64,000 nucleotides of DNA, from assembly GCF_964213995.1 (NCBI RefSeq), contig NW_027590143.1:868001-932000 (forward strand), read 5' to 3'. Position 1 is the stretch's first letter. Every line of letters starts with the position of its first letter. The notes under the pieces are model-generated. The model was not told the origin of the DNA. It made no database searches and saw only the letters and a list, made by a program, of their open reading frames with translations. Shown here piece after piece: positions 3,104-49,272 of this stretch. The position numbers and the translations under genes are program-made. This stretch comes from Mustelus asterias. Lineage: Eukaryota.

Positions 3104-3429
3104 ATGGTCAGGATTTGCATCGACGTTTTGTTGTTTTTCACTCTGATCTGCACGGGGGTGACCGGAGAAGCTGAGTTGCTGCAGCTCCCTCCACGGATGG
3201 TTATCAGTGGAGCGAGGAATATATCCATGAACTGCACTATTTCCATTCCGTTTGACATCGTGCGTTGGTATAAACAGCTCCCGAATCAGTCGCCCCAGTG
3301 ATGGCCACAAGAGGAACCGATCAACACGGGAGGATCACTACTTCGATCGGAGAAGGCAACAAACTCAGCATCCTGACTGTGAGAGACGTACAGGTTTCAG
3401 ACACTGCCACCTATTTCTGCACCATGAGG
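3104..3429 (+). pseudogene. TCR alpha/delta-type V pseudogene with leader and V in a single exon
   Basis: MVRICIDVLLFFTLICTGVTG-EAELLQ...NC...WYKQ..SPQ, frameshift/stop at ~3299, then ...LTVRDVQVSDTATYFCTMR; RSS follows. Confidence 0.9.
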
Positions 3430-3468
3430 CACAGTGTAATAAACACAGGGAGGTCCCGTACCAAAACT
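3430..3468 (+). other. RSS, 23-bp spacer
   Basis: CACAGTG-23-ACCAAAACT. Confidence 0.92.
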
Positions 3469-6488: not shown

Positions 6489-7477
6489 ATGTTTCTGATC
6501 ATACTGGTGATGCTCTGGGACAGTAAGTGATGAATTATGTTCGTTCAAACAGTTTAGCAGATTGATAAAATAGATTGTGCTATGATTTTTGGAGACTAAA
6601 TCGGTCAGGGTTATATTCACTGGAGTTTAGAAGAGTGAAGGGGATCTCATAGAATCTCATAAAATTCTAACAGGGTTAGACAGGATAGATTCAGAAAGAA
6701 TGCCCCCAATGATGGGGGAGTCCAAAACTAGCCGTCATAATTTGAAGATAAGGGGTAAACCATTTTGAACAAAGGTGAGGAGAAATCTTTCCACACAGAG
6801 CGTGGAGAATGTGTGGAATTCACTACCACAGAATGTAGCTGAGGCCAAAATGTTGTCTGATTTCAAGAAGAAATTAGATATAGCTCTTGGAGCTAAAGGA
6901 ATTAAGAGATATTGGGGAATGGAGAACCAGGATATTGAACTCAATAATCAGTAATGACCAAAATGAATGGCGGAGCAGGCTCGAAGGGCCGACTGGCCTA
7001 CTCCTGCTTCTCGTTTCAACGTTTTTCTGTTTCGATTTAAAATGGATAAAGATCAGGTATATATTTAGAGGGGCAGGTTGGAAAATGGAAATTCGCGCAC
7101 ACTTATACAGATAGATCGATCCTCTTTCATCGCGATCTTATTTTTCATTTACTTTAACAGGCGGGCTATGTGCGGTAAATCAGTCCCCGTGTCGGTAACT
7201 CTGTCGGAAGGGGGTTCGGCGAAGCTGGATTGCAAATATACAGACCAGGCTATAGACACCATGCAGTGGTATCGACAGAAACCGGCAGAGCCTCCAAGAT
7301 GGATAATTAGTAATGTAGTAGCACTGAAGAAAGATGCGATCTCAGGGCGATATCTGGCGGCTGCTGACGAGTCTACAAAGTCTGGTTATAAGCGGCCTCA
7401 GTGGAGAGGACCGAGCGGTCTATTGCTGTGCTGTGAGGCACAGCGTTAGATTACAGCTAAAACCCTGCACAAAAACC
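6489..7477 (+). pseudogene. TRAV-type pseudogene: leader 6489-6522, V exon 7161-7438, RSS 7439-7477
   Basis: MFLIILVMLWD|GTAAGT; V AVNQSP..LDCKY..MQWYRQKP..EDRAVYCCAVR with two frameshifts; CACAGCG-23-ACAAAAACC. Confidence 0.9.
6590..7020 (+). mobile_element. CR1 3' fragment in the leader intron
   Basis: CR1 ORF2 end and 3' UTR (GAATGGCGGAGCAGGCTCGAAGGGCCGA). Confidence 0.8.
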
Positions 7478-22009: not shown

Positions 22010-22593
22010 ATGACACCAGTTAAGCTTCTCGTGATCTCATTTCTATTCGGTAAATTGGAACATGTGGAACACTTGTTAATATGACTTGTCATTCTTCCCC
22101 CTATATTATCTAAATACTGAAATGTATTCTTTCCTCTGGTGTAAATAATCCAAATGTGATAGTTAGATTGTGATTGATTTTCCTCATTTTGAAAGCGGGG
22201 AGAGGGGGATGCTTGTCATCAATCAGGGGGTTACCTGAATGTTTTGCATATTATTTGCATATTGCAGGTATATTCCAAGGGAGTTCGGTAACACAGATTC
22301 AACGTCAGTTGAAGGAACTAACCTGGAATTGAGCTGTAATTACAACTCCATTCTGTTGACCTGGATCTGGTACCGGCTTTACCCGAACCAGCCACTTCAG
22401 CCATTATTGCACTGGGATGACACCACGCGCAAGGAAGCCGAGTTTGCCGAAGGAAAATTCGATGCTTGGCATTTCAGTCTATATAAGCTTTTCCCTTTGT
22501 CAATTTCTGCAGTGGAGACAAAAGACAGTGCCCTCTATTTCAGTGGATTGAGGATCACGGTGCCTCAAACCGGGTGTGACCCGTACAAAAACC
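22010..22593 (+). pseudogene. TRAV-type pseudogene: leader 22010-22049, V exon 22268-22555, RSS 22556-22593
   Basis: MTPVKLLVISFLF|GTAAAT; GSSVTQ then frameshift, LELSCNY..WIWYR..FPLSISAVETKDSALYFS (second Cys lost); CACGGTG-22-ACAAAAACC. Confidence 0.9.
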
Positions 22594-28302: not shown

Positions 28303-28937
28303 GGCTGCTTCCGAGCCCGAACCGCTCTTTTCCTTTATAATTTCAAACCCGAAACAGGACAAAGACCCACACAGGGTTCAATTGGTTAAAATCACTTCCT
28401 TCTCCTTTGTTTTCCGGCAGTGACGCAATCCTTAATGTACCCGCCAGATATTTAAATCAGATTCAAATGAGGGCCCTAGACAGCTGAAGTTCTTTGGCAG
28501 ACAGGATTAAATATGTACGAGTGAAATCAGTCACTCAGTCAGTATACTCGAGAGAGCGTGCTTAACTGCAGCTTTCCTGAGGTCTGAGATTCATTTCCGG
28601 GGGCCGAGTTGGTCAGGTTTCGCTGGCATCGCCCACATCCATTGAATTAATAACAAAAATAATCAAGTCGAGAGCAAGTAGAGCATGGCATTCACGACTG
28701 TCGGTCGCGGGGTGAATCTCTCGATTCTAGCTGCCGGGGCGTTTTGACTGAAAGTTCACATCTGGGATCGCCATTTAAATCCTTGAGCTTTATTTGAACG
28801 GTGGGCATGGCCTGATTTACAGATGTTTGGGTGTGAAGAATTTCAGTGCAGCTTTAATGTCCAGTCTCCCAAAGCAGTCCAGCTCTGCAGTCTCCAGCTC
28901 CCTGTCATGTAAATCATCATCTCCAGGCAGCAGAGCG

Positions 28938-29402
28938 ATGGGAATCCTTGTTTTCACCCTGTGTATCTGTTTACCCGTGAGTATCGATCACATTAACCCA
29001 CATCCTGTGGATTGAATAAAGTGCTGCCCCAGTCCATCCCAATTGCAGGCACAGCCTAGGATTTTAACGCCGTTGTATGGTTCGGCTCTGGTGGCCCAAT
29101 AAACTCTCTGTGTTTAATTTCCAGGATGTTTCAGTCAGTCAGTGACACAGAGCCCGGCAGCGGTGATCAGGAAGGAGTGTCAGTCTCCCACCATCATCTG
29201 TGTTTTCTCTGGAGTTTATGAGTTCGAAAATGGCCATTTCTTTAGAAAAACCCCGACCGGGACATCCAGGGAGCGGATCTCCAGCGGAGCGAGATTTGTT
29301 GTCTCGGTGAACAAAGCAGAAAAGACATTTTCACTTGAAAATCGGGATTTGAGAGTTGAAGACACTGCAAAGCTCAGTGCTGGTACTACACACATGGGAT
29401 AC
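28938..29402 (+). pseudogene. NAR-TCR V (IgNAR-like V), probably germline V-D joined; leader 28938-28976, V exon 29125-29402
   Basis: QSVTQSPAAVIRKECQSPTIICVF..FRKTPTGTSRERISSGARFVVSVNKAEKTFSLENRDLRVEDTA has the VNAR layout (short FR2-CDR2 region, ERIS-x-G-x-RF..VN..K-x-FSL) and a non-canonical FR1 Cys; an apparent ~13-nt deletion removes TYY; leader ends in phase 0. Confidence 0.85.
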
Positions 29403-29430
29403 CGCAGTGGAAGAGAGAAGAACAAATAGC
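29403..29430 (+). other. RSS with 12-bp spacer (heptamer mutated)
   Basis: CGCAGTG-GAAGAGAGAAGA-ACAAATAGC. Confidence 0.7.
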
Positions 29431-29606
29431 TCATGGCAATCGAAGAAGTAATGCCCAGCAATTCCCAAGTTCGGTAACTTGACCTTTCGGGTTGATGTTA
29501 CTCCCACTTCAATTTGGTTTAAATTCATTGTAAATTCCTCCCATCAGTTATAATTCTTCAAGATTTTTCGCCGTTAATAAGAATCTTCCATCTCTGCCTC
29601 TGTTCC

Positions 29607-32378
29607 AACAAAGAACAATGCAGCTCAGGAACAGGCCCTTCGGCCCTCCAAGACCGCGCCGCTCCATGGTCCAAACTACACCATTCTTTTGTATCCCTCC
29701 ATTCCCACTCCGTTCATGTGGCTATCGAGATAAGTCTTAAACGTTCCCAGTGTGTCCGCCTCCACCACCTTGCCCGACAGCGCATTCCAGGCCCCCACCA
29801 CCCTCTGTGTAAAATACGTCCTCCTGATATCCGTATTAAACCTCCCATCCATCCCCCGCAGCCCCCCCCCCCCCCTCACCTTGAATCTATGACCCCTCGT
29901 GAACGTCACCACCGACCTGGGAAAAAGCATCCCACCGTTCACCCTATCTATTCGTTTCATAATTTTATACACCTCTATTAGGTCACCCCTCATCCTCCGT
30001 CTTTCCAGTGAGAACAACCCCAGTTTACCCAATCGCTCCTCATAACTAAGCCCTTCCATACCAGGCAATATCCTGGTAAACCACCTCTGCACTCTCTCTA
30101 AAGCCTCCACGTCCTTCTGGTAGTGTGGCGACCAGAACTGGGCGCAGTATTCCAAATACGGCCGAACCAATGTTCTGTACAACTGCAACATCAGACCCCA
30201 ACTTTTATACTCTATGCCGCAAGCATGCCATATGCCTTATTCACTACCTTCTCCACCTGTGACGTCACCTTCAAGGATCTGTGGACTTGCACACCCAGGT
30301 CCCTTTGCGTATCTACACCCTTGATGGTTCTGTCATTTATCGTCCAGCTCCCCCCTACGCTAGTTCGGCAAAATGCATCACTTCGCATTCATCTGGATTG
30401 AACTCCATCTGCCATTTCTTTTCTCAAATTTCCAGCCTATCTAGATCCTTCTGCAGCCTCTGACAATGTTCCTCACTATCTGCAAGTCCAGCCATTTTCG
30501 TGTCGTCCACAAACTTACTGATCACCCCAGTTACACCTTCTTCCAGATCGTTTATATAGATCACAAACAGCAGAGGTCTCAACACAGAGCCCTGCGGAAC
30601 ACCACTCGTCACAGGCATCCAGCCGGAAAAAGACCCTTCCACTACCACCCTCTGTCTTCTGTGACCAAGCTAGTTCTCCACGCATTCAGCCACACCCCCC
30701 TTTATCCCATGAGATCCAACCTTTTTCACCAGCCTGCCATGAGGGACTTTGTCAAACGCTTTCCTAAAGTCCATATAGACGACATCCACGGCCCTTCCCT
30801 CGTCAACCATTCTAGTCATTTCTTCAAAAAACTCCACCAGGTTAGTGAGGCATGACCTCCCTCTCACAAAACCATGCTGACTATCGTTAATGAGTTTATT
30901 TCTTTCTAAATGCGCATACATTCTATCTCTAAGAATCCTCTCCAAAAACTTCCCTACTACGGACGTCAAGCTCACCGGCCTATAATTTTCCGGGTTATCC
31001 TTCCTACCCTTCTTAAATAACGGGACCACATTAGCTATCCTCCAATCCTCTGGGACCTCACCTGTGTCCAGTGACGAGACAAAGATTTGCGTCAGAGGCC
31101 CAGCGATTCCATCTCTCGTCTCCCTGAGCAGCCTTGGATAGATTCCATCAGGCCCTGGGGATTTGTCAGTCTTAATATTCGCTAAAAAATCCTAACGCTT
31201 CATCCCTTGTACTGGAGATTTTCGCTAACGGGTCAGCACTCCCCTCCGAGACACTCCCAGTCAACACATCCCTCTCCTTTGTGAATACCGACGCAAAGTA
31301 TTCATTTAGGATCTCCCCTACTTCTTTGGGCTCTAATTCCCCACTTTTGTCCCTGAGAGGTCCGATTTTTATCCCTGACAACCCTTTTGTTCCTAACGTA
31401 TGAATAAAATGCCTTGGGATTCTCTTTAGTCCTGTCTGCCAAGGACATTTCGTGACCCATATTTGCCCTTCTAATTCCTCGTTTGAGTTCTTTCCTACTT
31501 TCTTTGTATTCCTCCAGAGCTCCTTCCGTTTTTAACTGCCTGGACCTAACATACGTCTCTCTTTTCTTTTTGACCAGTCCCTCAATTTCCCTGGTTATCC
31601 ACGGTTCTCGAATCCTACCCTTCCTATCCTTCTTTTTTACAGGCACATGTCTATCCTGCAGCCCTAACAACTGTTCCTTAAAAGACTCCCACATGCCAGA
31701 TGTGGATTTACCCTCAAACAGCCTCTCCCAATCAACAGCTGCCAGTTTCTGCCTAATCCCACTAAAGTTAGCCTTCCCCCAATCCAACACCTTACCCTTG
31801 GGACACCACTCATCCTTTTCCATCACTATCCTAAAGCTAACAGAATTGTGGTCACTGTTTGCCACATGTTTCCCTACCGAAACTTTGAAGACCTGACCGG
31901 GCTTATTCCCCAGTATCAGGTCCAGTATAGCCCCCTCTCTAGTCGGGCTATCTACCTATTGTTCCAAAGAACCCTCCTGTACGCATTTTACAAATTCCTC
32001 CCCATTCAGAGTCCCAGCCCTACGCGATTTCCAGTCTATACCAGGGAAATTGAAGTCTCCCACTACAACAACCCTATTTTTCCTGCACCTATCCATTATC
32101 TCCTGACATATCCGTTCTTCCACTTCCCTTGGGCTGTTGGGGAGCCTGTAGTACACCCCCAACATAGTGACTGCGCCCTTCCTGTTTCTGAGCTCCACCC
32201 ACAGTGACTCGTTACACGACCCCTCTGAATTGCCCTCCCGCCACCGCTGTAATATGCTCTCCAACTAATACTGCTCCTCCCCCACCTCTTTTGGCCCCTC
32301 CCCTGTCTCGCCTAAAACACTTGTCCCCCGGAATATTCAGCTGCCACTCCTGTCCCTCTTTCAACCAAGTCTCTGTTC
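29607..32378 (-). mobile_element. 5'-truncated CR1 inserted between NAR V and NAR J
   Basis: Fragmented APE/RT ORFs; flanking direct repeat CTCTGTTCC at 29598-29606 and 32371-32379. Confidence 0.93.
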
Positions 32379-32536
32379 CTGGGCTATTTTCCCAGGAGCT
32401 CAGCAAGTCACAAGGCACCGTTTGATTCAATGAGGTTTTTTTTAAACAATCAAGTTCATTATTGATCTAAATTCCCTGAATAATTGAGAAACGCTGACAG
32501 TCCGGTAATGGTTGCCCGGTAGTTTGAGGTGTCAGT

Positions 32537-32626
32537 CATTCCTGTGCTGGGCAGACTGGGAGCTCTGTCACTGTGGGGTGAATGGAGATTTTCAGATGGG
32601 TCTGAGACGGTAGACTGTCACAGCCC
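32537..32626 (+). pseudogene. NAR-TCR J segment (32576-32626) with upstream 23-RSS
   Basis: CATTCCTGT-23-CACTGTG then GEWRFSDGSETV[frameshift]TVTA C|GTAAGT, resembling the NAR J motif DG-x-GTVLTV. Confidence 0.75.
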
Positions 32627-32907
32627 GTAAGTGATTCCAAATCCCCTTGTGTTATTCACTATCCTGGTTAGTGTTCACCATCAGTTATTATTCGTTATCA
32701 GTATCACTTCACTGCTGTGCTTCTGAAGCAGGGTGGTTCGCAAAGGATGCTCTTCACTTGCAAATTTAGACTTGGGAGCAGAGTAAGAAACTGAAATCGG
32801 GTCGGGCTTTGAGACCGGATTGAAGCAGTGTGAGTCTCCAAAGGATAGGTATCCTATGGGGAAGGAGGGTCAGCTGACCCCATCTGAACCATTGTTGGTT
32901 TAAGGAA

Positions 32908-33000
32908 CAGTAAGGAGTCTCACAACACCGGGTTAAAGTCCAACCGGTTTATTTGGAATCACAAGCTTTCGGGGCGCTGCTTCTTCCCAGGTGAGAGGAG
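32908..33000 (-). mobile_element. Penelope-like terminal fragment
   Basis: Same motif set as 40620-40817 (CACCRGGTTAAAGTCCAA..GCTTTCGG..GCGCTGCT). Confidence 0.6.
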
Positions 33001-33449
33001 AATTCGGGGAGTCCCGCCAGGGCCGATGGCGGAATTCCAATTCAATAAAAATACGTGGAATTGAGAATCTACCGATGACCATGAAACCATTGTCGATTAT
33101 TAGAAAAATCCATCTGGTTCACAAATGTCTTTCAGGGAAGGAAATCTGTGGTCCTTACCTGGTCTGGCCTATATGTGACTGCAGAACCACAGCAATGTGG
33201 TAGACTCTCCACTGCCCTTGGGTAACTAGGGACGGTCAGCCAGTCAGCCATGACGCACATGTCTCATGAATGAATAAAAAACACATTGTGGACACTCCGA
33301 ACACTGCTCCCTGCCCTCCGCTGAGAAACAGCGAAGTCACTGAGCACAGGATTTCTCTCTGCTCCAGGAAATGTGAATCAGGTAGCGGGAGAGTTAATCC
33401 AACATTGCAGCGACAGATCCAATACCTGCAGTGACAGGAAAACGGGAAC

Positions 33450-33785
33450 TATAGAATTATAGAAACCCTACAGTGCAGAAAGAGGCCATTTGGCCCATCG
33501 AGTCTGCGCCGACCACAATCCCACCCAGGCCCTACCCCCATAGCCACCCACTAATCCCTCTAACCTACGCATCTCAGGAAACTGAGGGGGAATTTTAGCT
33601 TGGCCAATCAACCTGACCTGCACATCTTTGGACTGTGGGAGGAAACCGGAGCACACAGAGGAAACCCACGCAGACACAAGGAGAATGTGCAAACTCCACA
33701 CAGACAGTGACCCGAGCCGGGAATCGAACCCAGGTCCCTGGAGCTGTGAAGCAGCAGTGCTAACCACTGTGCTACCGTGCCACCC
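33450..33785 (-). mobile_element. HE1-type tRNA-derived SINE
   Basis: GGCACGGTAGCACAGTGGTTAGCACTGCTGCTTCACAGC..GGTTCGATTCCC head and CR1-like 3' tail. Confidence 0.9.
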
Positions 33786-33859
33786 ATGCCGCTCGTGCCA
33801 GGGAACATGGCACAAATAGCTTCAAGATCATTTTATAGTTGTTGATGGCATTTCATTAA

Positions 33860-36800
33860 ACTAAAAAGTAGGGCCTCCAGGGTGGCCATCTCTGGGCTGC
33901 TCCCAATGCCTCGTGCTAGTGAGGCCAAGAATAGGGAGTTAGTATAATTGAATGCTTGGCTAAAGGACTGGTCCAGGAGGGAGGGCTTCATTTTCCTAGA
34001 TCAATGGGAAGATTTCAGGAGAGAATGGCAACTGTACAAGAAGGACGGGTCACAACTAAGTTGGAAGGGCACGAATATCCACGCTGGGAGTTTTGCTAGT
34101 GCAGTTCGGGGGGCTTTAAACTAGTATGGCAGGCGGGTGGGGATCAAAATATTAGGTCTACAAGTGTAGACTGCGGACTGGGACAAGGCTGGCAAAGAAG
34201 AATAGCATTCTGGGGGAGGATGACCTCACTGGGCCTGGAAGTCTGGAGTGCTTATACTGCAATGCAAGGAGCGTAGCAGGTAAGACAGACGAACTTAGGG
34301 CCTTAATGCTCACGAGGGATTTGGATGTGATTGCGGTGACGGAGACTTGGTTGAAAGAGGGACAGGACTGGCAGCTGAATATTCCAGGGTACAAGTGTTT
34401 TAGGCGAGACAGAGGAGGGGCCAAAAGAGGTGGGGGAGTAGCGGTATTAGTTGGAGAGCATATTACAGCGGTGCAGAGGGAGGACAATTCAGAGGGGTCG
34501 TGTAACGAGTCACTCTGGGTGGAGCTTAGTAACAGGACGGGCGCAGTCACTATGTTGGGGGTGTACTACAGGCCCGTCAACAGCCCAAGGGAAGTGGAAG
34601 AACGGATATATCAGGAGATACTGGATAGGTGCAGGAAAAATAGGGTTGTTGTAGTGGGAGACTTCAATTTCCCTGGTATAGACTGGAATTCGCTGAGAGC
34701 TTGGACTCTGAATGGGGAGGAATTTGTAAAATGCGTACAGGAGGGTTCTTTGGAACAATATGTAGATAGCCCGACTAGAGACGGGCCTATACTGGATCTA
34801 GTACTGGGGAATGAGCCCGGTCAGGTCTTCAAAGTTTCGGTAGGGGAACATGTGGCAAATAGTGACCACAATTCTGTTAGCTTTAGGATAGTGATGGAAA
34901 AGGATGAGTGGTGTCCCAAGGGTAAGGTGTTGGATTGGGGGAAGGCGAACTTTAGTGGGATCAGGCAGAAATTGGCAGCTCTTGATTGGGAGAGGCTGTT
35001 TGAGGGTAAATCCACATCTGGCATGTGGGAGTCTTTTAAGGAACAGTCGTTAGGGCTGCAGGACAGGCATGTGCCTGTAAAAAAGAAGGATAGGAAGGGT
35101 AGGATTCGAGAACCGTGGATAACCAGGGAAATTGAGGGACTGGTCAAAAAGAAAAGAGAGACGTATGTTAGGTCCAGGCAGCTAAAAACGGAGGGAGCTC
35201 TGGAGGAGTACAAAGAAAGTAGGAAAGAACTCAAACGGGGAATTAGAAGGGCAACAAAGGGTCACGAAATGTCCTTGGCAGACAGGATTAAGGAGAATCC
35301 CAAGGCATTTTATTCATACGTTCGGAACAAAAGGGTTGTCAGGGAAAAAATCGGACCTCTCAGGGACAAAAGTGGGGAATTATGCTTGGAGCCCAAAGAA
35401 GTAGGGGAGATCCTAAATGAATACTTTGCGTCGGTATTCACAAAGGAGAGGGATGTGTTGACTGGGAGTGTCTCGGAGGGGAGTGTTGAACCGTTGGAGA
35501 AAATCTCCATTACAAGGGAGGAAGTGTTAGGTTTGTTAGAGAATATAAAGACTGACAAATCCCCAGGGCCTGATGGAATCAATCCAAGGCTGCTCAGGGA
35601 GACGAGAGATGAAATCGCTGGGCCACTGACGCAAATCTTTGTCTCGTCGCTGGACGCAGGTGAGGTCCCAGAGGATTGGAGGATAGCTAATGTGGTCCCG
35701 TTATTTAGGAAGGGTAGGAAGGATAACCCGGGTAATTATAGGCCGGTGAGCTTGAAGTCCGTGGTGGGGAAGTTGTTGGAGAAGATTCTTAGAGATAGGA
35801 TGTATGCGCATTTAGAAAGGAATAAACTCATTAACGATAGTCAGCATGGTTTTGTGAGAGGGAGGTCATGCCTCACTAACCTGCTGGAGATTTTTGAAGA
35901 AGTGACCAGAATGGTTGACGAGGGAAGGGCGGTGGATGTCGGCTATATGGACTTTAGTAAAGCGTTTGACAAAGTCCCCCATGGAAGGCTGGTGAAAAAG
36001 GTTGGATCTCATGAGATAAAGGGGAGGTGGCTATATAGCTGGAGAACTGGCTTGGTCACAGAAGACAGAGGGTGGTAGTGGAGGCGTATTCTTCCGGCTG
36101 GAGGCCTGTGACTAGTGGTGTTCCGCAGGGCTCTGTATTGGGACCTCTGCTGTTTGTGATTTATATAAACGATCTGGAAGAAGGTGTAACTGGGGTGATC
36201 AGTAAGTTTGCGGACGACACAAAATTGGCAGGACTTGCAGATAGTGAGGAGCATTGTCAGAAGCTACAGAAGGATATAGATAGGCTGGAAATTTGGGCAA
36301 AGAAATGGCAGATGGAGTTCAATCCTGATTAATGCGAAGTGATGCATTTTGGTAGAAATAATGTAGGGAGGAGCTATACGATAAATGGCAGTACCATAAA
36401 GGGTGTAGATACGCAGGGGGACCTAGGTGTGCAAGTCCACAGATCCTTGAAGGTGACGTCACAGGTGGAGAAGTTGGTGAAGAAGGCATATGGCATGCTT
36501 CCCTTTATAGGACGGGTCATAGAGTATAAAAGTTGGGGTCTGATGTTGCAGATGTATAGAACGTTGGTTCGGCCGCATTTGGAATACTGCGTCCAGTTCT
36601 GGTCGCCACACTACCAGAAGGACGTGGAGGCTTTGGAGAGAGTACAGAGGAGGTTTACCAGGATGTTGCCTGGTATGGAGGAGCTTAGTTATGAGGAGAG
36701 ATTGGGTAAACTGGGGTTGTTCTCCCTGGAAAGACGGAGAATGAGGGGAGACTTAATAGAGGTGTATAAAATTATGAAAGGCATAGATAGGGTGAACGGT

Positions 36801-37118
36801 GGGAAGCTTTTCCCCAGGTCGGTGGTGACGTTCACGAGGGGCCATAGGTTCAAGGTGAAGGGGGGGGGGGGGGAGGTTTGACACAGATATCAGAAGGACA
36901 TATTGTACACAGATGGTGGTGGGGGCCTGGAATGCGCTGCCAGGCAAGGTGGTGGAGGCGGACACACTGGGAACGTTTAAGACTTATCTCCACAGCCATA
37001 TGAACGTAGTGGGAATGGAGGGATACAAAGGAAGGGTCTCGTTTGGACCAGGGAGCGGCACGGGCTTGGAGGGCCGAAGGGCCTGTTTCTATGCTGTATT
37101 TTTCTTTGTTCTTTGTTC
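33860..37118 (+). mobile_element. 5'-truncated CR1 (end of ORF1 plus nearly complete ORF2 with frameshift/stop)
   Basis: 590-aa APE-RT ORF 34306-36078 continued by 36072-36332 and 36339-36881. Confidence 0.95.
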
Positions 37119-39311
37119 ATTCTTGCACAATCAGTGACTAACACTAATTATATCCTACCTGATTTTTATTTCCATCCGATAGTCGATCATTTCTGCTTTG
37201 GCAGAATTGTGAAAACTTTAAATTGCATACTCTTCCACATATTGAACACTGACGGTGGATAAATCGGTTTGCATTACATTTTCTCGATTTCGAAAACATG
37301 GGATTGTGCTCATTGAAGCTTAATCAGTTCCTCAAGGATTGGTTGTGTCGAGGCTGAGGATGCTGAACCGTTCCATAGATTCTATTCTTGAATACTAATG
37401 GAAACAATGGATTTTGGAATAGAGCACGCAGTTCTCATTAAGGTAGATGATCAGAACGAAACTTCCTGAATTGGACAGCGGGTCCCCAAAATGGATCGGT
37501 CTACCATGTTTCTATTTCTTATGTATCTTATTATCAGCTTACATTTCTTACATTCCTGAGAAAATAAATAATCAACAATGTGTATGGATATCGAAAGTTC
37601 AGGATCGCTTTGCCATTTGTCTCTTACAGACCGGTAAGACATGAAAAAACAGCAGAGAAATATTTAACATTGTGTTTTAGTTTCTAGGAGCTCCATGTGC
37701 AGAAACTGATCCTTCAGTGGAGTGAAGTTTTTAATTAATTCATTTGTGTGACATGGGTGTCGCTGCTTGGCCAACATTTATTGTGCATCCCTGTTCGCCC
37801 TTGAAATGAGAGGCTTGCTCGTCCATTTCAGAGAGCAGTTAAGAGTCCACCACATTGCTGTGATTCTAGAGTCACATATAGGCCAGACAGGGTAAGAACG
37901 CCATATTTCCTTGCTTAAAGGACATTAGTGAACCATATGGAATTTGACAGCAATCGAGAATGGCTTCATGATCAGCAGTAGATTATTAATTCCAGGTTTT
38001 ATTTTTATTGAAGTCAAATTCTACCAGCTGCCGAGGCAGGATTCAAACCTGGGTCCCCAGAGCAAGGAGACGTTTACACATGAAATTATGAGCAGAACAG
38101 ATAGAAATATTCGGGTATGTTTACACGGAGACACATCAGAATGTATAGGTCGCTGTTTGGAGAAACGGCGTGATGAATTTATGGCAAGCTTGAAAAATAT
38201 GGGCGGGAGAGAGGAATAAATAGACACACAGCTCAGGATGTAAATTGTTATTTCCTGTTCGAGAGGAGAAGGGGCAAGAACATGCTTCGGCCAGCTGGGC
38301 CCAGTGGCCTATTCGTTTTAAGTGGAAAGTGTAGAATGTAAAACTTTGAGACAATTCTGTTCGGAAAGGACAATCAGCCAATGTACTAAAGGGATTGAAA
38401 TTCTCACATACCCTGAAGACAGTGCCCAGTGAGTAACAGTAACACCACTGCGGAAATTGAACAGGCTGAACCCAACCGACAACTGCAAGAAATTTGTACA
38501 AGTTCTCATGACGGTTGGAAACCACTAAGAACAGGCAGGAAACAACTCAGATGCAGAAATAGAACGAAACCAACTTGCAAATATTTCTAATAGAAGTAAA
38601 ACGGTAGAATCGATGGACGGAAATAGACAAATAGCAGACATTAACTTGCAGTGTTGAACTGCGGCCAAAGGTCGATCATTGACCCACGGATATACATTGT
38701 CAGTTTGGATTAATAGATGCGGACGAATATCTCTGCCCCGTGCTGAACCTGGATACATACAGGGACATAAAACTGCTGATTGTCCTTTGAGCAATGAAAC
38801 GTAGACAGCAAATTATTATGTGAGGAGAAGAGTGAACTTTATGATTTCGTTTCCTGGTTCGTATTTCGCCAATATATTTATTGGCACCTTTCTAATAAAA
38901 ATAGAATCATACTCCGCAACAAAACACAATTCTGTCAATAGAGACAATAATTTGAAGGTGCTGCCAATGTACCCATTCGGCCTTCTTTGGTCCCCTTGGC
39001 ACTGGAATATTGTCCTGTCCCAGAAGTTCTCCCTTCCACCGCCCCCCCGCCCTCCCCCAATTACCATTTGAAAGTCAATGTTAAATCAGCTCCCAGCACC
39101 ACCCTTTTCGCTGTTCACTTCAGGTGACTGCAATTCTCTGTGAAAAAAGGTCTGAAAATCTGCCACTCTTGTTTATTTCCAATAATCAATGCTTTTTGAA
39201 ACAAATTCAGTTAAACAAATTCCCGCAACAGACAGGTATTCACCCGATTGAAAAGTTTTCCCGGGGTAAACAGTGGCTAAAGAAACAATTCATTTTATTT
39301 CTATCCTGCAG

Positions 39312-39617
39312 ATTCCAGCTCAACTGTGTCACCGAGTTCACTTCTCCAAACGTCTGCCGCAGGTGACACGGTTACTTTAAGCTGTGAATATTCAGGGAAC
39401 TGTCAATATACAGTACACTGGTACCGTCAATCCCCAGGACAGGCTCCGAAATACCTCCTTCAGACACACACTTCAGGAGAGGATAATAAGAAACAGGTTG
39501 CCGGGGACGGAATTTCTGTTTATACACTTTCGTCAGTCAAAATCAACCGGTTAGAGATCTTCAAACTACAATTGAGCGACTCCGCTGTGTATTACTGTGA
39601 ACTGAGTGAGCGCACAG
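39312..39617 (+). CDS. NAR-TCR supporting TCR-delta V exon, open frame, CDR1 Cys
   Basis: Acceptor CCTGCAG|; SSTVSPSSLLQTSAAGDTVTLSCEYSGNCQYTVHWYRQ..LSDSAVYYCELSERT; phase compatible with the J donor at 32627. Confidence 0.88.
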
Positions 39618-39717
39618 CACACTGATACAGAACACGGAGAGATTTGTTCAAAAACCTGAACATGGTGAGAATTACAGACACGGTGATGCAGAACACGAAG
39701 AGAGCTGTACAAAAACC
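39618..39717 (+). other. Two tandem 23-RSSs (61-bp period)
   Basis: CACACTG-23-TCAAAAACC (39618-39656) and CACGGTG-23-ACAAAAACC (39679-39717). Confidence 0.9.
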
Positions 39718-39763
39718 TGAACATGGTTCGGGTTACAGATTCTTGTACTTCTCACCATGTTCA

Positions 39764-40108
39764 GGTTTCTGTACAGCTCTTACCGTGTTCTGTATCACTG
39801 TGCTGTGCGCCTACTCAGTGCACAGTAATACACAGCGGAGTCACTGAGTGGCAGTTTGGAGATCGTTAACCGGCTGATTTTTTCAAGGGGATCGACAGAA
39901 GCAGAAATTCTCCCCCCGGTAGCGTTTTCTTTGCTCGCCTCGCCTGATGTGTGTCTCTTAAGCAGGTATTTTGGGGTCTGTCTTGGGGAGTGACGGTACC
40001 AGTGGAGTGCGTGTTGTCAAAATCCCGGATATTCAAAGTTTAAAGTAATGGTGTCTTTAGCAGTAGAGGTTTGGAGAGATGGATTCTGTGACACAGATAA
40101 ACCAGATT
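39764..40108 (-). pseudogene. Second, inverted supporting V-delta pseudogene with RSS 39802-39764
   Basis: SVSQNPSLQTSTAKDTITLNFEYPGF*QHALHWYR..LSDSAVYYCALSRRT; first Cys to Phe, CDR1 Cys to TGA; CACAGTG-23-ACAGAAACC. Confidence 0.9.
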
Positions 40109-44896: not shown

Positions 44897-47800
44897 AAGC
44901 ATCCTAAAAAAGGCGGGTAACCAGACAGACGTCATTGTCCACATTGGTGCAAATGACGTCAGCAGAAAGAGCAGGGAGATCCTGCGAGAGCAATTCAGGG
45001 AGTTGTGTGGTAGGCTAAAAAGCAAGGCTTCTAGGGTAGCGATCTCTGGACTACTCCCAATGTCACAAGCTAGTGAGGCTAAGAACAGAGACTGCACAGC
45101 TGAACGCGTGGATAAAGGACTGTTGCAGGAGGGAGGGTTTCGAATTCGTGGATCACTGGGAAGTCTTCAAGAGAGGGTGGCACCTGTACAAGAAGGACGG
45201 GTTGCACCTAAACTGGAGGGGTACGAATAGCCTAGCTGGGAGTTTTGCTAGTGTGGTTCAGGTGGGTTTAAACTAATGTGGCAGGGGGGTGGGGATCAGA
45301 ACAATAGGTCAATAAGCATAGAGGCTTGGGACGAGTTTGGGGCCAAGACAAGGCTATCTAAGAGGAAGGGCATTCTGGGGGAGGATGACCTCAGTGGGCC
45401 TGGAGGTCTGGAGTGCATCTGCTTCAATGCACGGAGCGTCACGGCCAAGACAGACGAGCTTAGAGCCTTAATGCTTGCCGGAACTTGGATGTGGTTGCAG
45501 TAACGGAGACTTGGTTAAAAGAAGGACAGGACTGGCAGCTGAATATTCCGGCGTATAAGTGTTTTAGGCGAGACAGAGGAGGGGCGAGGAGAGGTGGGGG
45601 AGTAGCAATGCTGGTTAGGGAGCATATTACAGCGGTACAGAGGGTGGACAATATGGAAGGGTCAGGTAACGAGTCACTGTGGGTGGAGCTCAGGAACAGG
45701 AAGGGCGCAGTCACTATGCTGGGGGTATACTACAGGCCACGTGCTGGGGGTATACTACAACCCACGGGAAGTTGAGGAACGGATATGTAAGGAGATTCTG
45801 GACAGGTGCAGAAAAAATAGGGTTGTTGCAGTGGGAGATTTTAATTTCCCTCGCATAGACTGGAAATCGCTTTGGGCTGGGGGCCTGGACGGGGAAGAAT
45901 TTATAAAATGCGTACAGGAAGGTTCTTTGGAACAATATGTTGACAGTCCAACTAGAGAGGGGGCTATACTGGACCTAGTACTGGGGAATGAGCCCGGTCA
46001 GGTCATCAAAGTTGCAGTAGGGGAACATGTGGCAAATAGTGACCACAATTCTGTAAACTTTAGGATAGTAATGGAAAGAGATGAGTGTTGTCCTATGGGT
46101 AAGGTACTGAATTGGGGAAAGGCAAACTACAGCCGAATTAGGCAGGATTTGGTGGCTGTTGATTGGGAGAGGCTGTTCGAGGGTAAATCCACATCTGGCA
46201 TGTGGGAGTATTTTAAGGAGCAGTTGATAGGACTGCAGGACAGGCATGTGCCTGGAAAGAGGAAGGCTAGGAAAGGTAGGATTCGAGAGCCGTGGATAAC
46301 CAGTGAAATTATGGGTCTAATCAAAAAGAAAAAAGAGGCATACATAAGGTCCAGGGAGCTAAAAACAGATGGAGCACTGGAGGAAAACAGAGAAAGTAGA
46401 AAATAACTCAAACAGGGACTTAGAAGGGCAAAGAGGGGTCACGAAATGTCCTTGGCCGACAGGATTAAGGAGAATCCTAAGGCATTTTATACATATGTTA
46501 AGAACAAGAGGGTTGTTAGGGAAAGAATCGGACCTCTCAGAGACAAAGGAGGGGAATTATGCTTAGAACCAAAGGAAGGAGGTGAGATCCTAAACAAATA
46601 CTTTGCATCAGTATTCACAAAGGAGAGGGACATGTTGACTGGTATTGTCTCAGAGAGATGTGTTGCCCCGTTAGAAAAAATCTCAATTACAAGGGAGGAA
46701 GTGTTAGGTTTTTTAGGAAACATTAAGACAGACAAATCCCCAGGGCCGGATGGCATCTATCCTAGACTCCTCAGGGAGGCGAGAGATGCAATTGCTGGGC
46801 CTCCAACAGAAATCTTTGTCTCTTCGCTGGACACAGGTAAGGTCCCAGAGGATTGGAGGATAGCAAATGTGGTCCCGTTATTTAAGAAGGGTAGCAAGGA
46901 TAACCCGGGTAATTATAGGCCGGTGAGCTTGACGTCCGTGGTAGGGAAGTTGTTAGAAATGATTCTTAGAGATAGGACATAAGCGCATTTAGCACTGAAT
47001 AATCTCATTAGCGATAGACAGCATGGTTTTGTACGAGGGAGGTGATGCCTCACAAATTTGGTTGAGTTTTTTGAGGAGGTGACAAAAATGATTGACGAGG
47101 GAAGGGCCGTGGGTCTCGTCTATATGGATTTTTGTTAAGCGTTTGACAAGGTCTCTCATGGCAGGCTGGTGCAAAAGGTTAAATCTCACGGAATAAAAGG
47201 TGAGCTAGCGAGATGGGTGGGGAACTGGCTTAGCCATAGAAGACAGAGGGTAGCAGTGCAGGGGTCTTTTTCCGGTTGGAGGGCTGTGACTAGTGGTGTT
47301 CCGCAGGGCTCTGTACTGGGACCTCTGCTGTTTGTAATATATATAAATGATTTGGAGGAAGATGTAGCTGGTGTGATCAGTAGGTTTGCGGATGACATGA
47401 AGATTGCTGGAGTTGGGGATAGTGATGAACATTGTCAGAGAATACAGCAGGATATAGATAGGCTGGAACATTGGGCAGACGAATGGCAGATGGAATTTAA
47501 TCCAGATAAATGCGAGGTGATGCATTTCGGTAGATCTAATGTAAGGGGGGGCGATACAATAAATGGCAGAACCATCAGGAGTACAGACACACAGACACAG
47601 ACACACTGGGTGTACAAGTCCACAGATCCTTAAAGGTGGCAGCACAGGTGGAGAGGGTGGGGAAGAAGGCATATAGCATGTTTGCCTTTATTGGACGGGG
47701 CATAGAATATAAAAGTTGGCATATGATATTGCAGCTCTATAGAACGATGGTTAGGCCACATTTGGAATACTGCATCCAGTTCTGGTCGCCGCACTACCAG

Positions 47801-48625
47801 AAGGACGTGGAGGCTTTGGAGAGAGTACAGAGAAGGTTTACCAGGATGTTGCCTAGTATGGACGGCACGGTAGCACAGTGGTTAGCACTGCTGCTTCACA
47901 GCTCCAGGGTCCCGGGTTCGATTCCCGGCTCGGGTCACTGTCTGTGTGGAGTTTGCACATTCTCCTCGTGTCTGCGTGGGTTTTCTCCGGGTGCTCCGGT
48001 TTCCTCCCACAGTCCAAAGATGTGCAAGTTAGGTTGATTGGCCATGCTAAAATTGTCCCTTAGTGTCGTGGGATGCGTAGGTTAGAGGGATTAGTGGGTA
48101 AATAGGTAGGGCCTGGGTGGGATTGTGGTTGGTGCAGACTCGATGGGCCGAATGGCCTCTTTCTGCACTGTAGGGTTTCTATGTTTCTATGTTATGGAGG
48201 GTCTTAGCTATGAGGAGAGATTGGGTAAACTGGGGTTGTTCTCCCTGGAAAGACGGAGGATGAGGGGCGACCTAATAGAGGTGTATAAAATTATGAAGGG
48301 CATAGATAGGGTGAACAGTGGGAAGCATTTTCCCAGGTCGGAGGTGACGAACGCAAGGGGTCACGGGTTCAAGGTGATGTAGGCAAGGTTCAACACAGAT
48401 GTCAGGGGTACGTATTTTACACAGAGGTTGGTGGGGACCTGGAATGCACTGCCAAGCAAGATGATTGAGGTGGACACGCTGGGATTGTTTAAGACTTATC
48501 TAGCTAGCCACATGAACAGACTGGGAATAGAGGGATACAAACGAATGGTCCAGTGGGCACATGAGTGGCCAGGCTTGGAAGGCCGAAGAGCCTGTTCCTG
48601 TGCTGTATTGTTCTTTGTTCTTTGT
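44897..48625 (+). mobile_element. 5'-truncated CR1 with multiple stops/frameshifts, TSD TCAGG
   Basis: ORF1 esterase and ORF2 fragments; TCAGG at 44892-44896 and 48626-48630; absent from the paralogous site at ~25120. Confidence 0.93.
47863..48192 (+). mobile_element. HE1-type SINE nested in CR1
   Basis: SINE head and tail; TSD TATGGA at 47857-47862 and 48193-48198. Confidence 0.92.
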
Positions 48626-49272
48626 TCAGGTGCTGTCCTTGGATTGATACAGAAACCCCAGTTAGGTTATTTGATAACTCCGCACTCCAGGGCCGGACCT
48701 AAGACAAAGTCAGGCAATTGGCATTGTTTGGGCGAGTGTTGAGTGGGAAACTGAAAAAAGATGTGCACAGGCCTACGAGTTGTAATATTTACTATTGCTG
48801 CCAACAATGACAGGCAGAGAAGGACGGCCGAGCCCATCCAGCCTGTCCCCAATAAAAATGAGACAAATCTGTAGTGAAGTCACTATTGTAATGTAGGAAA
48901 CCTCACTATGAACAGAGCAAGATCACACGTAACGTGATCGTCTGTTGCAGTGATGTCGACTGAGATTTAAATGTCTTGGAGAATTGCCCTGCTTTAGAGG
49001 ATAGTGCGGTGAAGTGTTTAAGATCCTCCAGAAAGGCCAGTCGGAGCCTTTATTTCGTAGTTTATCTGAGCAATTCACTGCGGAGACACTAGGTCTCCAT
49101 TAGCACTGGCAGTGTAAGTGGCAGCTGAAATGTGCGCTCAGGTCTTCGGAGGGAGACTTGAACCACAGCTTTCTGAAGTACAGGCGATAGAATTGAGAAA
49201 ATTAACAGTGAACACAGAGTCGTGGATAGAGACTGAACTAGAGACATCGCCTGTGCCAATTCTATTTGGTGA

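What the first reader, a model, noticed from the sequence alone, without database searches (positions are those of the whole stretch)
28938..40108. Complete NAR-TCR (doubly rearranging TCR-delta) cassette embedded among conventional V genes
Seen: on one strand and in order, leader, VNAR-like V with an extra FR1 Cys (RKECQS), 12-RSS, 23-RSS + J with donor GTAAGT, then a V-delta exon with a CDR1 Cys (CEYSGNCQY) whose acceptor phase matches the J donor. Established: shark NAR-TCR chains carry an N-terminal IgNAR-like V spliced to a leaderless supporting V-delta, with non-canonical Cys proposed to link the two domains. Inference: this is one such cassette, and here its NAR half is pseudogenised (deletion at TYYC, J frameshift, CGC heptamer, CR1 between V and J) while the supporting V is still open. 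The system is known, but this copy may be unannotated.
Basis: partly seen in the sequence, partly recalled or inferred. Interest (0 to 1): 0.85.

Follow-up and report, generated by a model that had tools for sequence, protein, structure and literature searches.

The report
Dead shark NAR-TCR gene cassette
This is one copy of the shark two-variable-domain T-cell receptor delta cassette (NAR-TCR), a known system, whose front half is broken while its second variable exon still reads open.

Summary
On the + strand, in order, lie a leader, a NAR-lineage V exon (29125-29402) with a 12-spacer RSS, a 23-RSS plus J (32576-32626) with a GTAAGT donor, and a leaderless V exon (39312-39617) with a 23-RSS.

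The V groups with NAR-TCR V domains of six cartilaginous-fish species, not with IgNAR or conventional V. It has the a-b loop Cys and lacks the WYRK Trp. The J matches the NAR-TCR J consensus: score 41, next 26, and 0 of 200 shuffles reach 41. The second V falls among supporting V-delta domains and carries the CDR1 Cys.

The NAR half is dead. A 13-nt deletion removes TYY and shifts the frame; contigs of a ~2%-diverged relative show no gap there. The heptamer reads CGC. The J carries a 2-nt deletion that the relative lacks.

Two corrections. RSS plus donor alone is at chance level, and phase matching does not discriminate. There are two LINE insertions, one on each side of the J.

No RNA data were available. 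The system is known, so this is another, pseudogenised copy. The scan noted other NAR-TCR cassettes elsewhere in this genome.

The parts
28938..28980 (+). Leader exon of the NAR V (MGILVFTLCICLP). The strong donor GTGAGT at 28977 is phase 0; the weaker GT at 28981 is phase 1.
   Evidence: Homologous leaders MGILLVF.LCVCLP are seen in P0004, P0009 and P0027.
29125..29402 (+). NAR-TCR-type V exon, a pseudogene. A 13-nt deletion at about 29366-29369 removes TYY and shifts the frame before Cys104. It has a long 3' extension (..CWYYTHGI).
   Evidence: Contigs of a relative cover 29291-29632 with no gap.
29403..29430 (+). 12-spacer RSS of the NAR V: CGCAGTG, 12 nt, ACAAATAGC. Heptamer position 2 is G instead of A.
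   Evidence: The read-through tail of P0002 gives the same layout.
29607..32376 (-). 5'-truncated LINE copy inserted between NAR V and J.
   Evidence: The junction at 32376 is bridged by a contig of the relative (X3 record 24).
32537..32575 (+). 23-spacer RSS of the J: nonamer CATTCCTGT (5 of 9), 23 nt, heptamer CACTGTG.
32576..32626 (+). NAR-TCR J segment, read as SDGSETV / TVTA in two frames. It has a 2-nt deletion after 32612 and Gly to Glu in the G-x-G motif. The donor GTAAGT starts at 32627 (phase 1).
   Evidence: All 4 runs of the relative carry GT behind 32612.
32627..39311 (+). 6,685-nt intron between J and supporting V. It holds SINE-like repeats (32905-32986, 33451-33787), other repeats (33009-33232, 37832-38044) and a longer LINE copy (about 33861-37116, + strand).
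39312..39617 (+). Leaderless supporting V-delta exon, open, with CDR1 Cys (CEYSGNCQY).
39618..39656 (+). 23-spacer RSS of the supporting V: CACACTG, 23 nt, TCAAAAACC.
39679..39717 (+). Second, orphan 23-RSS (CACGGTG, 23 nt, ACAAAAACC). It is the second copy of a 61-nt tandem unit.
   Evidence: family D1.
39764..40108 (-). Inverted pseudo-copy of a supporting V with its 23-RSS (heptamer at 39802-39796), tail to tail with the first. Cys23 is Phe and the CDR1 Cys codon is a stop. It is also leaderless.
   Evidence: (56.5% identity over 92 aa, E 1e-28).

Best explanation
This is a germline NAR-TCR cassette of a shark TCR alpha/delta locus.

How an intact copy works:
- RAG joins the NAR V (12-RSS) to its own J (23-RSS).
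- Separately, RAG joins the downstream leaderless supporting V-delta (23-RSS) to D-delta/J-delta.
- One transcript starts at the NAR leader.
- Splicing goes leader to NAR VJ, then J donor to supporting V acceptor, then on to C-delta.
- The product is a three-domain delta chain. The a-b loop Cys of the NAR V is proposed to bond the CDR1 Cys of the supporting V.

In this copy the NAR half cannot work:
- A 13-nt deletion removes TYY and puts Cys104 out of frame.
- The heptamer is CGC.
- The J has lost 2 nt, so the frame that ends in TVTA runs into a stop.
- The best leader donor is out of phase.

The supporting V is still an open, unremarkable member of its family. Having no leader or promoter of its own, it is stranded.

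Shown: the anatomy, the family placement of V, J and supporting V, and the lesions.
Inferred: recombination, splicing and the disulfide.
For: NAR V:
- The best 7 PDB hits are all shark VNAR domains (E 1.2e-11 to 2.7e-10). The first conventional antibody V comes at E 1.8e-3.
- The library scan found 24 proteins at E<=1e-3. The top 15 (E 2.5e-35 to 4e-12) are NAR-like-V models with ..ECQS.. and FF(R/K)Q; 11 of the 14 I fetched also carry the J and supporting V, and 3 (P0008, P0009, P0013) hold only the NAR V. IgNAR heavy chains score only E 6.5e-7 and 2.3e-6.
- In the tree the window V lies in a 15-row NAR-TCR V clade (82/90). That clade is sister to IgNAR V (97/93), and the whole NAR lineage has 94/90.
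- The a-b loop Cys is present in 16 of 16 NAR-TCR-type rows and 0 of 4 IgNAR rows. The WYRK Trp is absent in 16 of 16 and present in 4 of 4 (sequences printed).

J:
- The consensus from the homologues is DGSGTVVTVTA followed directly by DS.. of the supporting V.
- The window scores 41 at 32595, the next best is 26, and 0 of 200 shuffles reach 41.
- The exon borders are homologous: TVTA plus a split codon, then SSS.

Supporting V:
- V-set E 3.5e-14.
- 51-66 identical residues over 85-95 aligned to the second V of 12 chains.
- It lies inside the supporting-V clade (94/81).
- The CDR1 Cys is present in 12 of 12 homologues.
- No leader candidate lies within 1 kb upstream. By contrast, a leader with a GTAAGT, GTAAAT or GTAAAG phase-1 donor was found for the conventional V at 4198-, 8161-, 22556+ and 27853-, and a more distant candidate for the V at 7439+.

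Other support:
- The C-terminal part of P0004 hits TCR delta constant chains; the top 9 rows have E 8.8e-11 to 6e-10.
- No D-like element lies between V and J (0 candidates).
- Lesions. The V deletion is shared by contigs of X1, X2 and X3 (0 gaps over 29291-29632), and GT is restored behind 32612 in 4 of 4 runs.
Against: - The J nonamer is weak (5 of 9), and RSS plus donor alone occurs as often in shuffles.
- There is no RNA evidence, so the 32626-to-39312 splice is inferred from homologous gene models of other species. Those models are computational predictions.
- C-delta, D-delta and J-delta are not in the window.
- Absence of a leader is a negative result of a pattern scan with my own thresholds. 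Two conventional pseudo-V (12589-, 49311-) also gave no candidate.
- The intron is long (6.7 kb), though at least about 4 kb of it is repeats.
- A second reading of the V-side RSS exists: CACATGG at 29391-97 with a 24-nt spacer to the same nonamer.
Confidence: 0.9

Rival explanations
1. The cassette is functional, and the lesions are errors of this assembly.
For: All 4 runs of a close relative carry the 2 nt that the window's J lacks. The window's own species was not among the runs (best share of words 0.5), so the J deletion could not be confirmed independently.
Against: The 13-nt V deletion lies in contigs of 3 runs (2 samples) with 0 gaps. A non-homopolymer 13-nt loss shared across genomes is not an assembly error. 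Even in the relative the J keeps Gly to Glu in the G-x-G motif, and a further change there (A to G at 32607, Thr to Ala) also departs from the consensus.
Confidence: 0.04
2. The V is an IgNAR heavy-chain cluster V, or an orphon of one, that happens to lie near TCR V genes. The J and the second V are unrelated neighbours.
For: PDB holds only IgNAR V structures, so the best solved relatives are VNARs. [quoted passage not shown]
Against: IgNAR chains score 28 or more orders of magnitude worse than NAR-TCR-type chains. The tree separates them. The V has the a-b Cys and lacks the Trp. No D elements and no C exons follow. The J matches the NAR-TCR J, and its exon border matches the supporting V border of the homologues.
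Confidence: 0.02
3. The V at 39312 is an ordinary TRDV/TRAV whose leader has decayed or was missed. It sits behind a NAR V-J orphon by chance.
For: Leader absence is negative evidence. Two conventional pseudo-V in the window also gave no leader candidate.
Against: It groups with the second V of two-V chains from five shark species and carries their CDR1 Cys, which 12 of 12 have. Its exon start is homologous to the point where those chains pass from J to V. Similarity to its inverted copy starts only 6 nt before the exon (pair I6).
Confidence: 0.04

Closest known systems
NAR-TcR of nurse shark (Criscitiello, Saltis, Flajnik 2006, PNAS 103:5036; the paper itself is not held, and its content is known here only through citing papers)
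   Same: An N-terminal NAR-lineage V made by its own rearrangement. It is carried on a leaderless supporting TCR-delta V with a CDR1 Cys, inside the TCR delta locus.
   Different: This copy is a pseudogene in its NAR half. The V carries a 12-RSS and the J a 23-RSS, with no D between them, whereas citing papers speak of VDJ rearrangements. Whether the 2006 paper describes this layout I could not check.
Elephant shark NAR-TcR genes (Venkatesh et al. 2007, PMC1845163, section 14 and Figure 3 legend read)
   Same: All four diagnostic features listed there are met: a leader and a-b loop Cys on the NAR V, no Trp in WYRK, no leader on the supporting V, and a Cys in its CDR1.
   Different: The window V groups with elasmobranch sequences, not with the Callorhinchus row P0016.
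IgNAR V clusters, including the partly germline-joined type III (PMC4622739, passage read)
   Same: The same V lineage. Germline joining of segments is known there and would explain a V with a long 3' extension and a 12-RSS.
   Different: IgNAR V keeps the Trp and lacks the a-b Cys. It is followed by D segments, a J and IgNAR C exons, not by a second V.
TCR-mu of marsupials and monotremes (PMC3457774, PMC2275272, passages read)
   Same: A three-domain chain with an antibody-like N-terminal V on a supporting V.
   Different: Convergent, not homologous: it uses a VH-derived V and has its own locus.

Membership tests
NAR-TCR cassette | The N-terminal V belongs to the NAR lineage and to its TCR branch. 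| tested here: met
   It lies inside a 15-row NAR-TCR V clade (82/90), and the NAR lineage has 94/90. Support for the TCR branch as a whole is moderate (82/76).
NAR-TCR cassette | The NAR V has a leader peptide exon. | tested here: met
   MGILVFTLCICLP lies 144-148 nt upstream. The strongest donor is out of phase, which may be a further lesion.
NAR-TCR cassette | A Cys in the a-b loop of the NAR V. | tested here: met
   RKECQS. The same column is Cys in 16 of 16 NAR-TCR-type rows and in 0 of 4 IgNAR rows.
NAR-TCR cassette | No Trp in the WYRK motif. | tested here: met
   HFFRK. Trp is absent in 16 of 16 NAR-TCR-type rows and present in 4 of 4 IgNAR rows.
NAR-TCR cassette | Its own J with an RSS and a splice donor, between the NAR V and the supporting V. 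| tested here: met
   The coding match is significant. The RSS-plus-donor pattern alone is not.
NAR-TCR cassette | The supporting V-delta lacks a leader exon. | tested here: met
   no candidate within 1 kb upstream, while four nearby conventional V and the NAR V have one in the usual place (a fifth, 7439+, has only a distant candidate). This is negative evidence only.
NAR-TCR cassette | The supporting V-delta has a Cys in CDR1. | tested here: met
   CEYSGNCQY. 12 of 12 homologues have it.
NAR-TCR cassette | The supporting V can rearrange to D-delta/J-delta (23-RSS). | tested here: met
   CACACTG-23-TCAAAAACC at 39618.
NAR-TCR cassette | Expressed as V-V-C-delta, spliced from the J to the supporting V. 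| not testable with these tools
   No RNA run was found and C-delta is outside the window. The homologue P0004 carries a TCR delta constant region.
NAR-TCR cassette (functional gene) | Open, in-frame NAR V with Cys104, an intact J and a CAC heptamer. | tested here: not met
   So it is a member of the family, but as a pseudogene.
IgNAR heavy-chain cluster | A V with the WYRK Trp and without the a-b Cys, followed by D segments, a J and IgNAR C exons. | tested here: not met
   (no D-like element). A second V follows, not C exons.

The most novel reading that the evidence does not exclude
The cassette belongs to a germline V-D-joined class of NAR-TCR genes. RAG acted in the germ line, leaving a V with about 6 extra codons and the D's 12-RSS. 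The V can therefore join the 23-RSS J directly, and no D remains in the 3.1-kb interval.

In addition, the cassette's parts are modular. In the relative the J is still in frame although the V was already dead. This would fit the J and the supporting V having been kept in use by NAR V segments of upstream cassettes rearranging into this J.
Probability: 0.3. Interest if true: 0.5.

Novelty: new member of a known kind. Interest (0 to 1): 0.27.

Why it matters
It adds one well-dissected, datable dead copy to a known multigene family.

Modest points of value:
- The order of decay can be read. The V deletion and the LINE insertion are shared with a ~2%-diverged relative, while the J deletion is private to the window.
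- It shows a V-12 / 23-J layout without a D.
- Public annotation leaves such genes unnamed or misnamed, so locus annotation of shark TCR delta would gain from the diagnostic features used here.

It does not open a new question.

Tried and rejected
- **RSS plus donor as evidence for the J.** Rejected as insufficient: 1 site observed, shuffle mean 0.94. Short ungapped peptide motifs did not single out the J either. The frameshift-tolerant two-block scan did.
- **A D segment between V and J.** None found. A second RSS-like site whose heptamer ends at 33771 lies in a tRNA-derived SINE and has no J behind it.
- **A second NAR V or J for the inverted supporting V.** None in the window.
- **The two LINE copies as one inverted duplication.** Rejected. 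The + copy extends at least about 480 nt further 5' than the - copy, as shown by a third copy at 45054-48628. They are independent insertions.
- **Decay of the supporting V at conserved residues.** It differs at 3 of 37 conserved columns, within the leave-one-out range of the 12 homologues (1-11). The NAR V differs at 3 of 23 (range 0-7). There is no signal either way.
- **Pfam on the 79-aa NAR V.** No family at E<=1.
- **Rows left out of the tree.** P0011, P0017 and P0018, because their NAR V is partial. P0022, P0023 and P0025, which are weak non-V hits. P0027, which had not been fetched yet.
- **Rows left out of the supporting-V alignment.** P0016. The other stored proteins have no second V.
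- **Rows left out of the NAR-V alignment.** P0011, P0013, P0016, P0017, P0018 and P0024.
- **Heptamer base 29404 in the relative.** Whether the G is shared could not be read, because the table shows only part of the differences.
- **Papers not held.** Criscitiello 2006, Ott 2021 and Criscitiello 2010. What they say on RSS spacers, D segments and distances is unknown to me. Figures are not held, and supplements were not asked for. The supplements of PMC12227049 may list NARTCR V positions.
- **Searches for print on RSS or germline joining in NAR-TCR.**. In the listings I recognised no shark paper that describes it.
Full report
**Setting.** The window is a cluster of V exons on both strands, each followed by a 23-spacer RSS. 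The RSS sites are at 3430+, 4198-, 7439+, 8161-, 12589-, 22556+, 24440+, 27853-, 43071+ and 49311-. Only two of these conventional V read open with both Cys (27853- and 43071+). The open V at 27853- finds TCR alpha and V-delta-1 chains among its best single-domain PDB matches. This is what a cartilaginous-fish TCR alpha/delta V region should look like. A tblastn of the NAR V against the window finds only itself (E 1e-50, next best E 0.14), so the window holds one NAR V.

**The NAR V.** The exon 29125-29402 translates, up to 29369, as SQSVTQSPAAVIRKECQSPTIICVF..HFFRK..ISSGARFVVSVNKAEKTFSLENRDLRVEDTA.
- In the PDB, the seven best matches are all shark VNAR domains (E 1.2e-11 to 2.7e-10). The first conventional antibody V appears at E 1.8e-3.
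- The full-library scan returned 24 proteins at E<=1e-3. The best 15 (E 2.5e-35 to 4e-12) are gene models with a NAR-like V. Most have, in this order, that V, a J reading (Y/A/V)DGSGTVVTVTA, and directly behind it a second V starting DS.SLVS..PLQTSAAGDTVTLSCEYSG.CQYTVHWY. Of the 14 I fetched, 11 carry the J and second V; P0008, P0009 and P0013 hold only the NAR V.
- These models come from Cetorhinus maximus, Heterodontus francisci, Mustelus asterias, Hemiscyllium ocellatum, Chiloscyllium plagiosum and Callorhinchus milii. They are named 'uncharacterized protein', 'T cell receptor alpha chain MC.7.G5-like' or 'immunoglobulin superfamily member 2-like'.
- One model, P0004, continues into a constant region. 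Its nine best PDB matches are TCR delta constant chains (E 8.8e-11 to 6e-10).
- True IgNAR heavy chains score far worse: P0019 at E 6.5e-7 and P0020 (Triakis scyllium) at E 2.3e-6.

**Tree.** In a maximum-likelihood tree of 31 rows, the window V lies in a 15-row clade of NAR-TCR-type V (82/90). Together with the two rows P0016 (Callorhinchus milii) and P0024 (source not looked up) this makes 17 rows (82/76). That group is sister to four IgNAR V (97/93). The NAR lineage as a whole (94/90) is apart from conventional and supporting V.

**Diagnostic residues.** Venkatesh et al. 2007 (PMC1845163, section 14 and Figure 3 legend) name the diagnostic residues, and the window has them. The a-b loop Cys is Cys in 16 of 16 NAR-TCR-type rows and in 0 of 4 IgNAR rows. 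The WYRK Trp is absent in 16 of 16 and present in 4 of 4.

**Lesions of the V.**
- Two close homologues read ..VEDTATYYC(Q/E)AQ.. (P0001 and P0002, 77% and 70% identity).
- The window reads ..VEDTA in one frame and CKAQCWYYTHGI in the next. So 13 nt, covering TYY, are missing, with TGCA shared by both sides (the arithmetic is mine).
- The read-through tail of P0002, YWYYTHGTPQWNGEGQIPKD, mirrors the window's CWYYTHGIPQWKREEQIAHG. The long 3' extension and the position of the RSS are therefore family features, not accidents.
- The heptamer is CGCAGTG. From established knowledge of RSS function (recalled), the first three bases CAC are the least tolerant, so this should cripple cleavage.
- The leader's best donor (GTGAGT at 28977) closes a 39-nt exon, which is phase 0, while the V acceptor needs phase 1. 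Homologues read ..CLP, one split codon, then (S/C)FSQSV. This fits the loss of one base here. A weaker GT at 28981 would restore the frame.

**The J.** The heptamer CACTGTG (32569-75), a 23-nt spacer, a weak nonamer (5 of 9) and a GTAAGT donor 51 nt downstream form the only such site in the window. By itself that is worthless, because shuffles give 0.94 sites on average and 53 of 100 shuffles have at least one.

The coding sequence settles it. I scored DGSGTV followed, at an offset of 19-23 nt, by TVTA. The window gives 41 at 32595, the next best is 26, and the highest of 200 shuffle maxima is 36. The J reads SDGSETV, then loses 2 nt, then reads TVTA plus one base. The supporting V starts with the two bases that complete the codon. 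This is exactly where the homologues pass from ..TVTA to DS... In the frame that ends in TVTA, a stop precedes it.

**The supporting V.** The exon 39312-39617 is open.
- It matches V-set (E 3.5e-14).
- It aligns to the second V of 12 two-V chains with 51-66 identities over 85-95 columns.
- It lies in the supporting-V clade (94/81).
- It has the CDR1 Cys that 12 of 12 homologues have.
- A scan for an ATG-started, hydrophobic exon ending in a GT donor found none within 1 kb upstream of it or of its inverted copy. It did find canonical leaders for the conventional V at 4198-, 8161-, 22556+ and 27853-, a more distant candidate for 7439+, and the leader of the NAR V.
- At conserved columns it is no more deviant than the homologues are from each other (3 of 37, range 1-11).
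- Phase matching between J and V is real but not diagnostic, since ordinary leader donors here are also phase 1.

**Between the parts.**
- A 5'-truncated LINE (29607-32376, - strand) sits between V and J.
- A longer copy of the same family (about 33861-37116, + strand) sits in the J-to-V intron, along with SINE-like repeats.
- The + copy encodes APE endonuclease and RT domains (E 4.6e-13 and 9.7e-14).
- I did not test whether it is CR1.
- No D-like element lies between V and J.

**A relative's DNA.** No run of the window's own genome and no RNA run was found. Four runs of one coded organism (three samples) hold 0.24-0.50 of the sampled words, which fits about 2% divergence (the estimate is mine). 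Their contigs were laid on 28900-32700.
- They cover 29291-29632 with no gap in X1, X2 and X3, so the 13-nt deletion is shared.
- They bridge the LINE junction at 32376 (X3 record 24).
- All four runs carry GT behind 32612, which restores one J frame.
- The V and the LINE insertion are therefore older than the split, and the J deletion is private to the window's lineage or, less likely, an assembly error.
- Up to 10 contigs per run lie on the V exon, so there are several paralogues.

**Behind the supporting V.**
- Its 23-RSS is part of a 61-nt unit that is repeated once (82% identity).
- An inverted 23-RSS and an inverted, dead supporting V (Cys23 to Phe, CDR1 Cys to stop) follow.
- The read-through tail of the Hemiscyllium model P0010 shows the same second unit (..ITDTVM..). 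The tail of P0015 (species not looked up) also appears to continue into a second unit (read by eye).

**What is known.** NAR-TCR has been described since 2006. I could read only citing papers. They state that the two V domains arise from separate V(D)J rearrangements, and they list the leader and Cys features. Within the searchable library I recognised no account of RSS spacers or germline joining in NAR-TCR; for the most part only the search listings were seen. Earlier notes of this scan report many NAR-TCR cassettes elsewhere in this genome, including a VD-12/23-J layout and RSS arrays with a 61-bp period. These are unchecked leads.

Noticed in passing
window 39618-39739: A 61-nt unit holding a complete 23-RSS is repeated in tandem behind the supporting V (82% identity). 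The read-through tail of the Hemiscyllium gene model P0010 contains the same second unit (..ITDTVM..), and the tail of P0015 (species not looked up) may too. A doubled RSS behind supporting V-delta therefore seems to be shared with at least one other shark species.
   Followed up: partly
window 39764-40108 (- strand): An inverted, dead copy of a supporting V lies tail to tail with the open one. No NAR V or J partner was found for it in 40.1-64 kb.
   Followed up: partly
window 29607-32376 (-), 33861-37116 (+), 45054-48628 (+): Three copies of one LINE family (APE plus RT). The two that flank the J are 92-95% alike and in opposite orientation. Summed word depth over this element in the relative's runs is about a million, so the family is extremely abundant.
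   Followed up: partly
proteins P0003, P0004, P0006, P0010-P0012, P0027: Public annotation leaves NAR-TCR gene models unnamed or misnamed: 'uncharacterized protein', 'T cell receptor alpha chain MC.7.G5-like', 'immunoglobulin superfamily member 2-like'.
   Followed up: yes
window 3104-3468 (+): A conventional V whose leader reads straight into the V without an intron (MVRICIDVLLFFTLICTGVTGE..) and then hits a stop. It still has a 23-RSS.
   Followed up: no
window, all conventional V exons: Of ten conventional V exons with a 23-RSS, only two (27853-, 43071+) read open with both Cys. The one at 22556+ is open but has Ser in place of the second Cys.
   Followed up: no
window 29378-29380: The extra Cys in the V's 3' extension (QCWYY) is private to the window. 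The relative has A at 29379, giving Tyr as in P0002.
   Followed up: no
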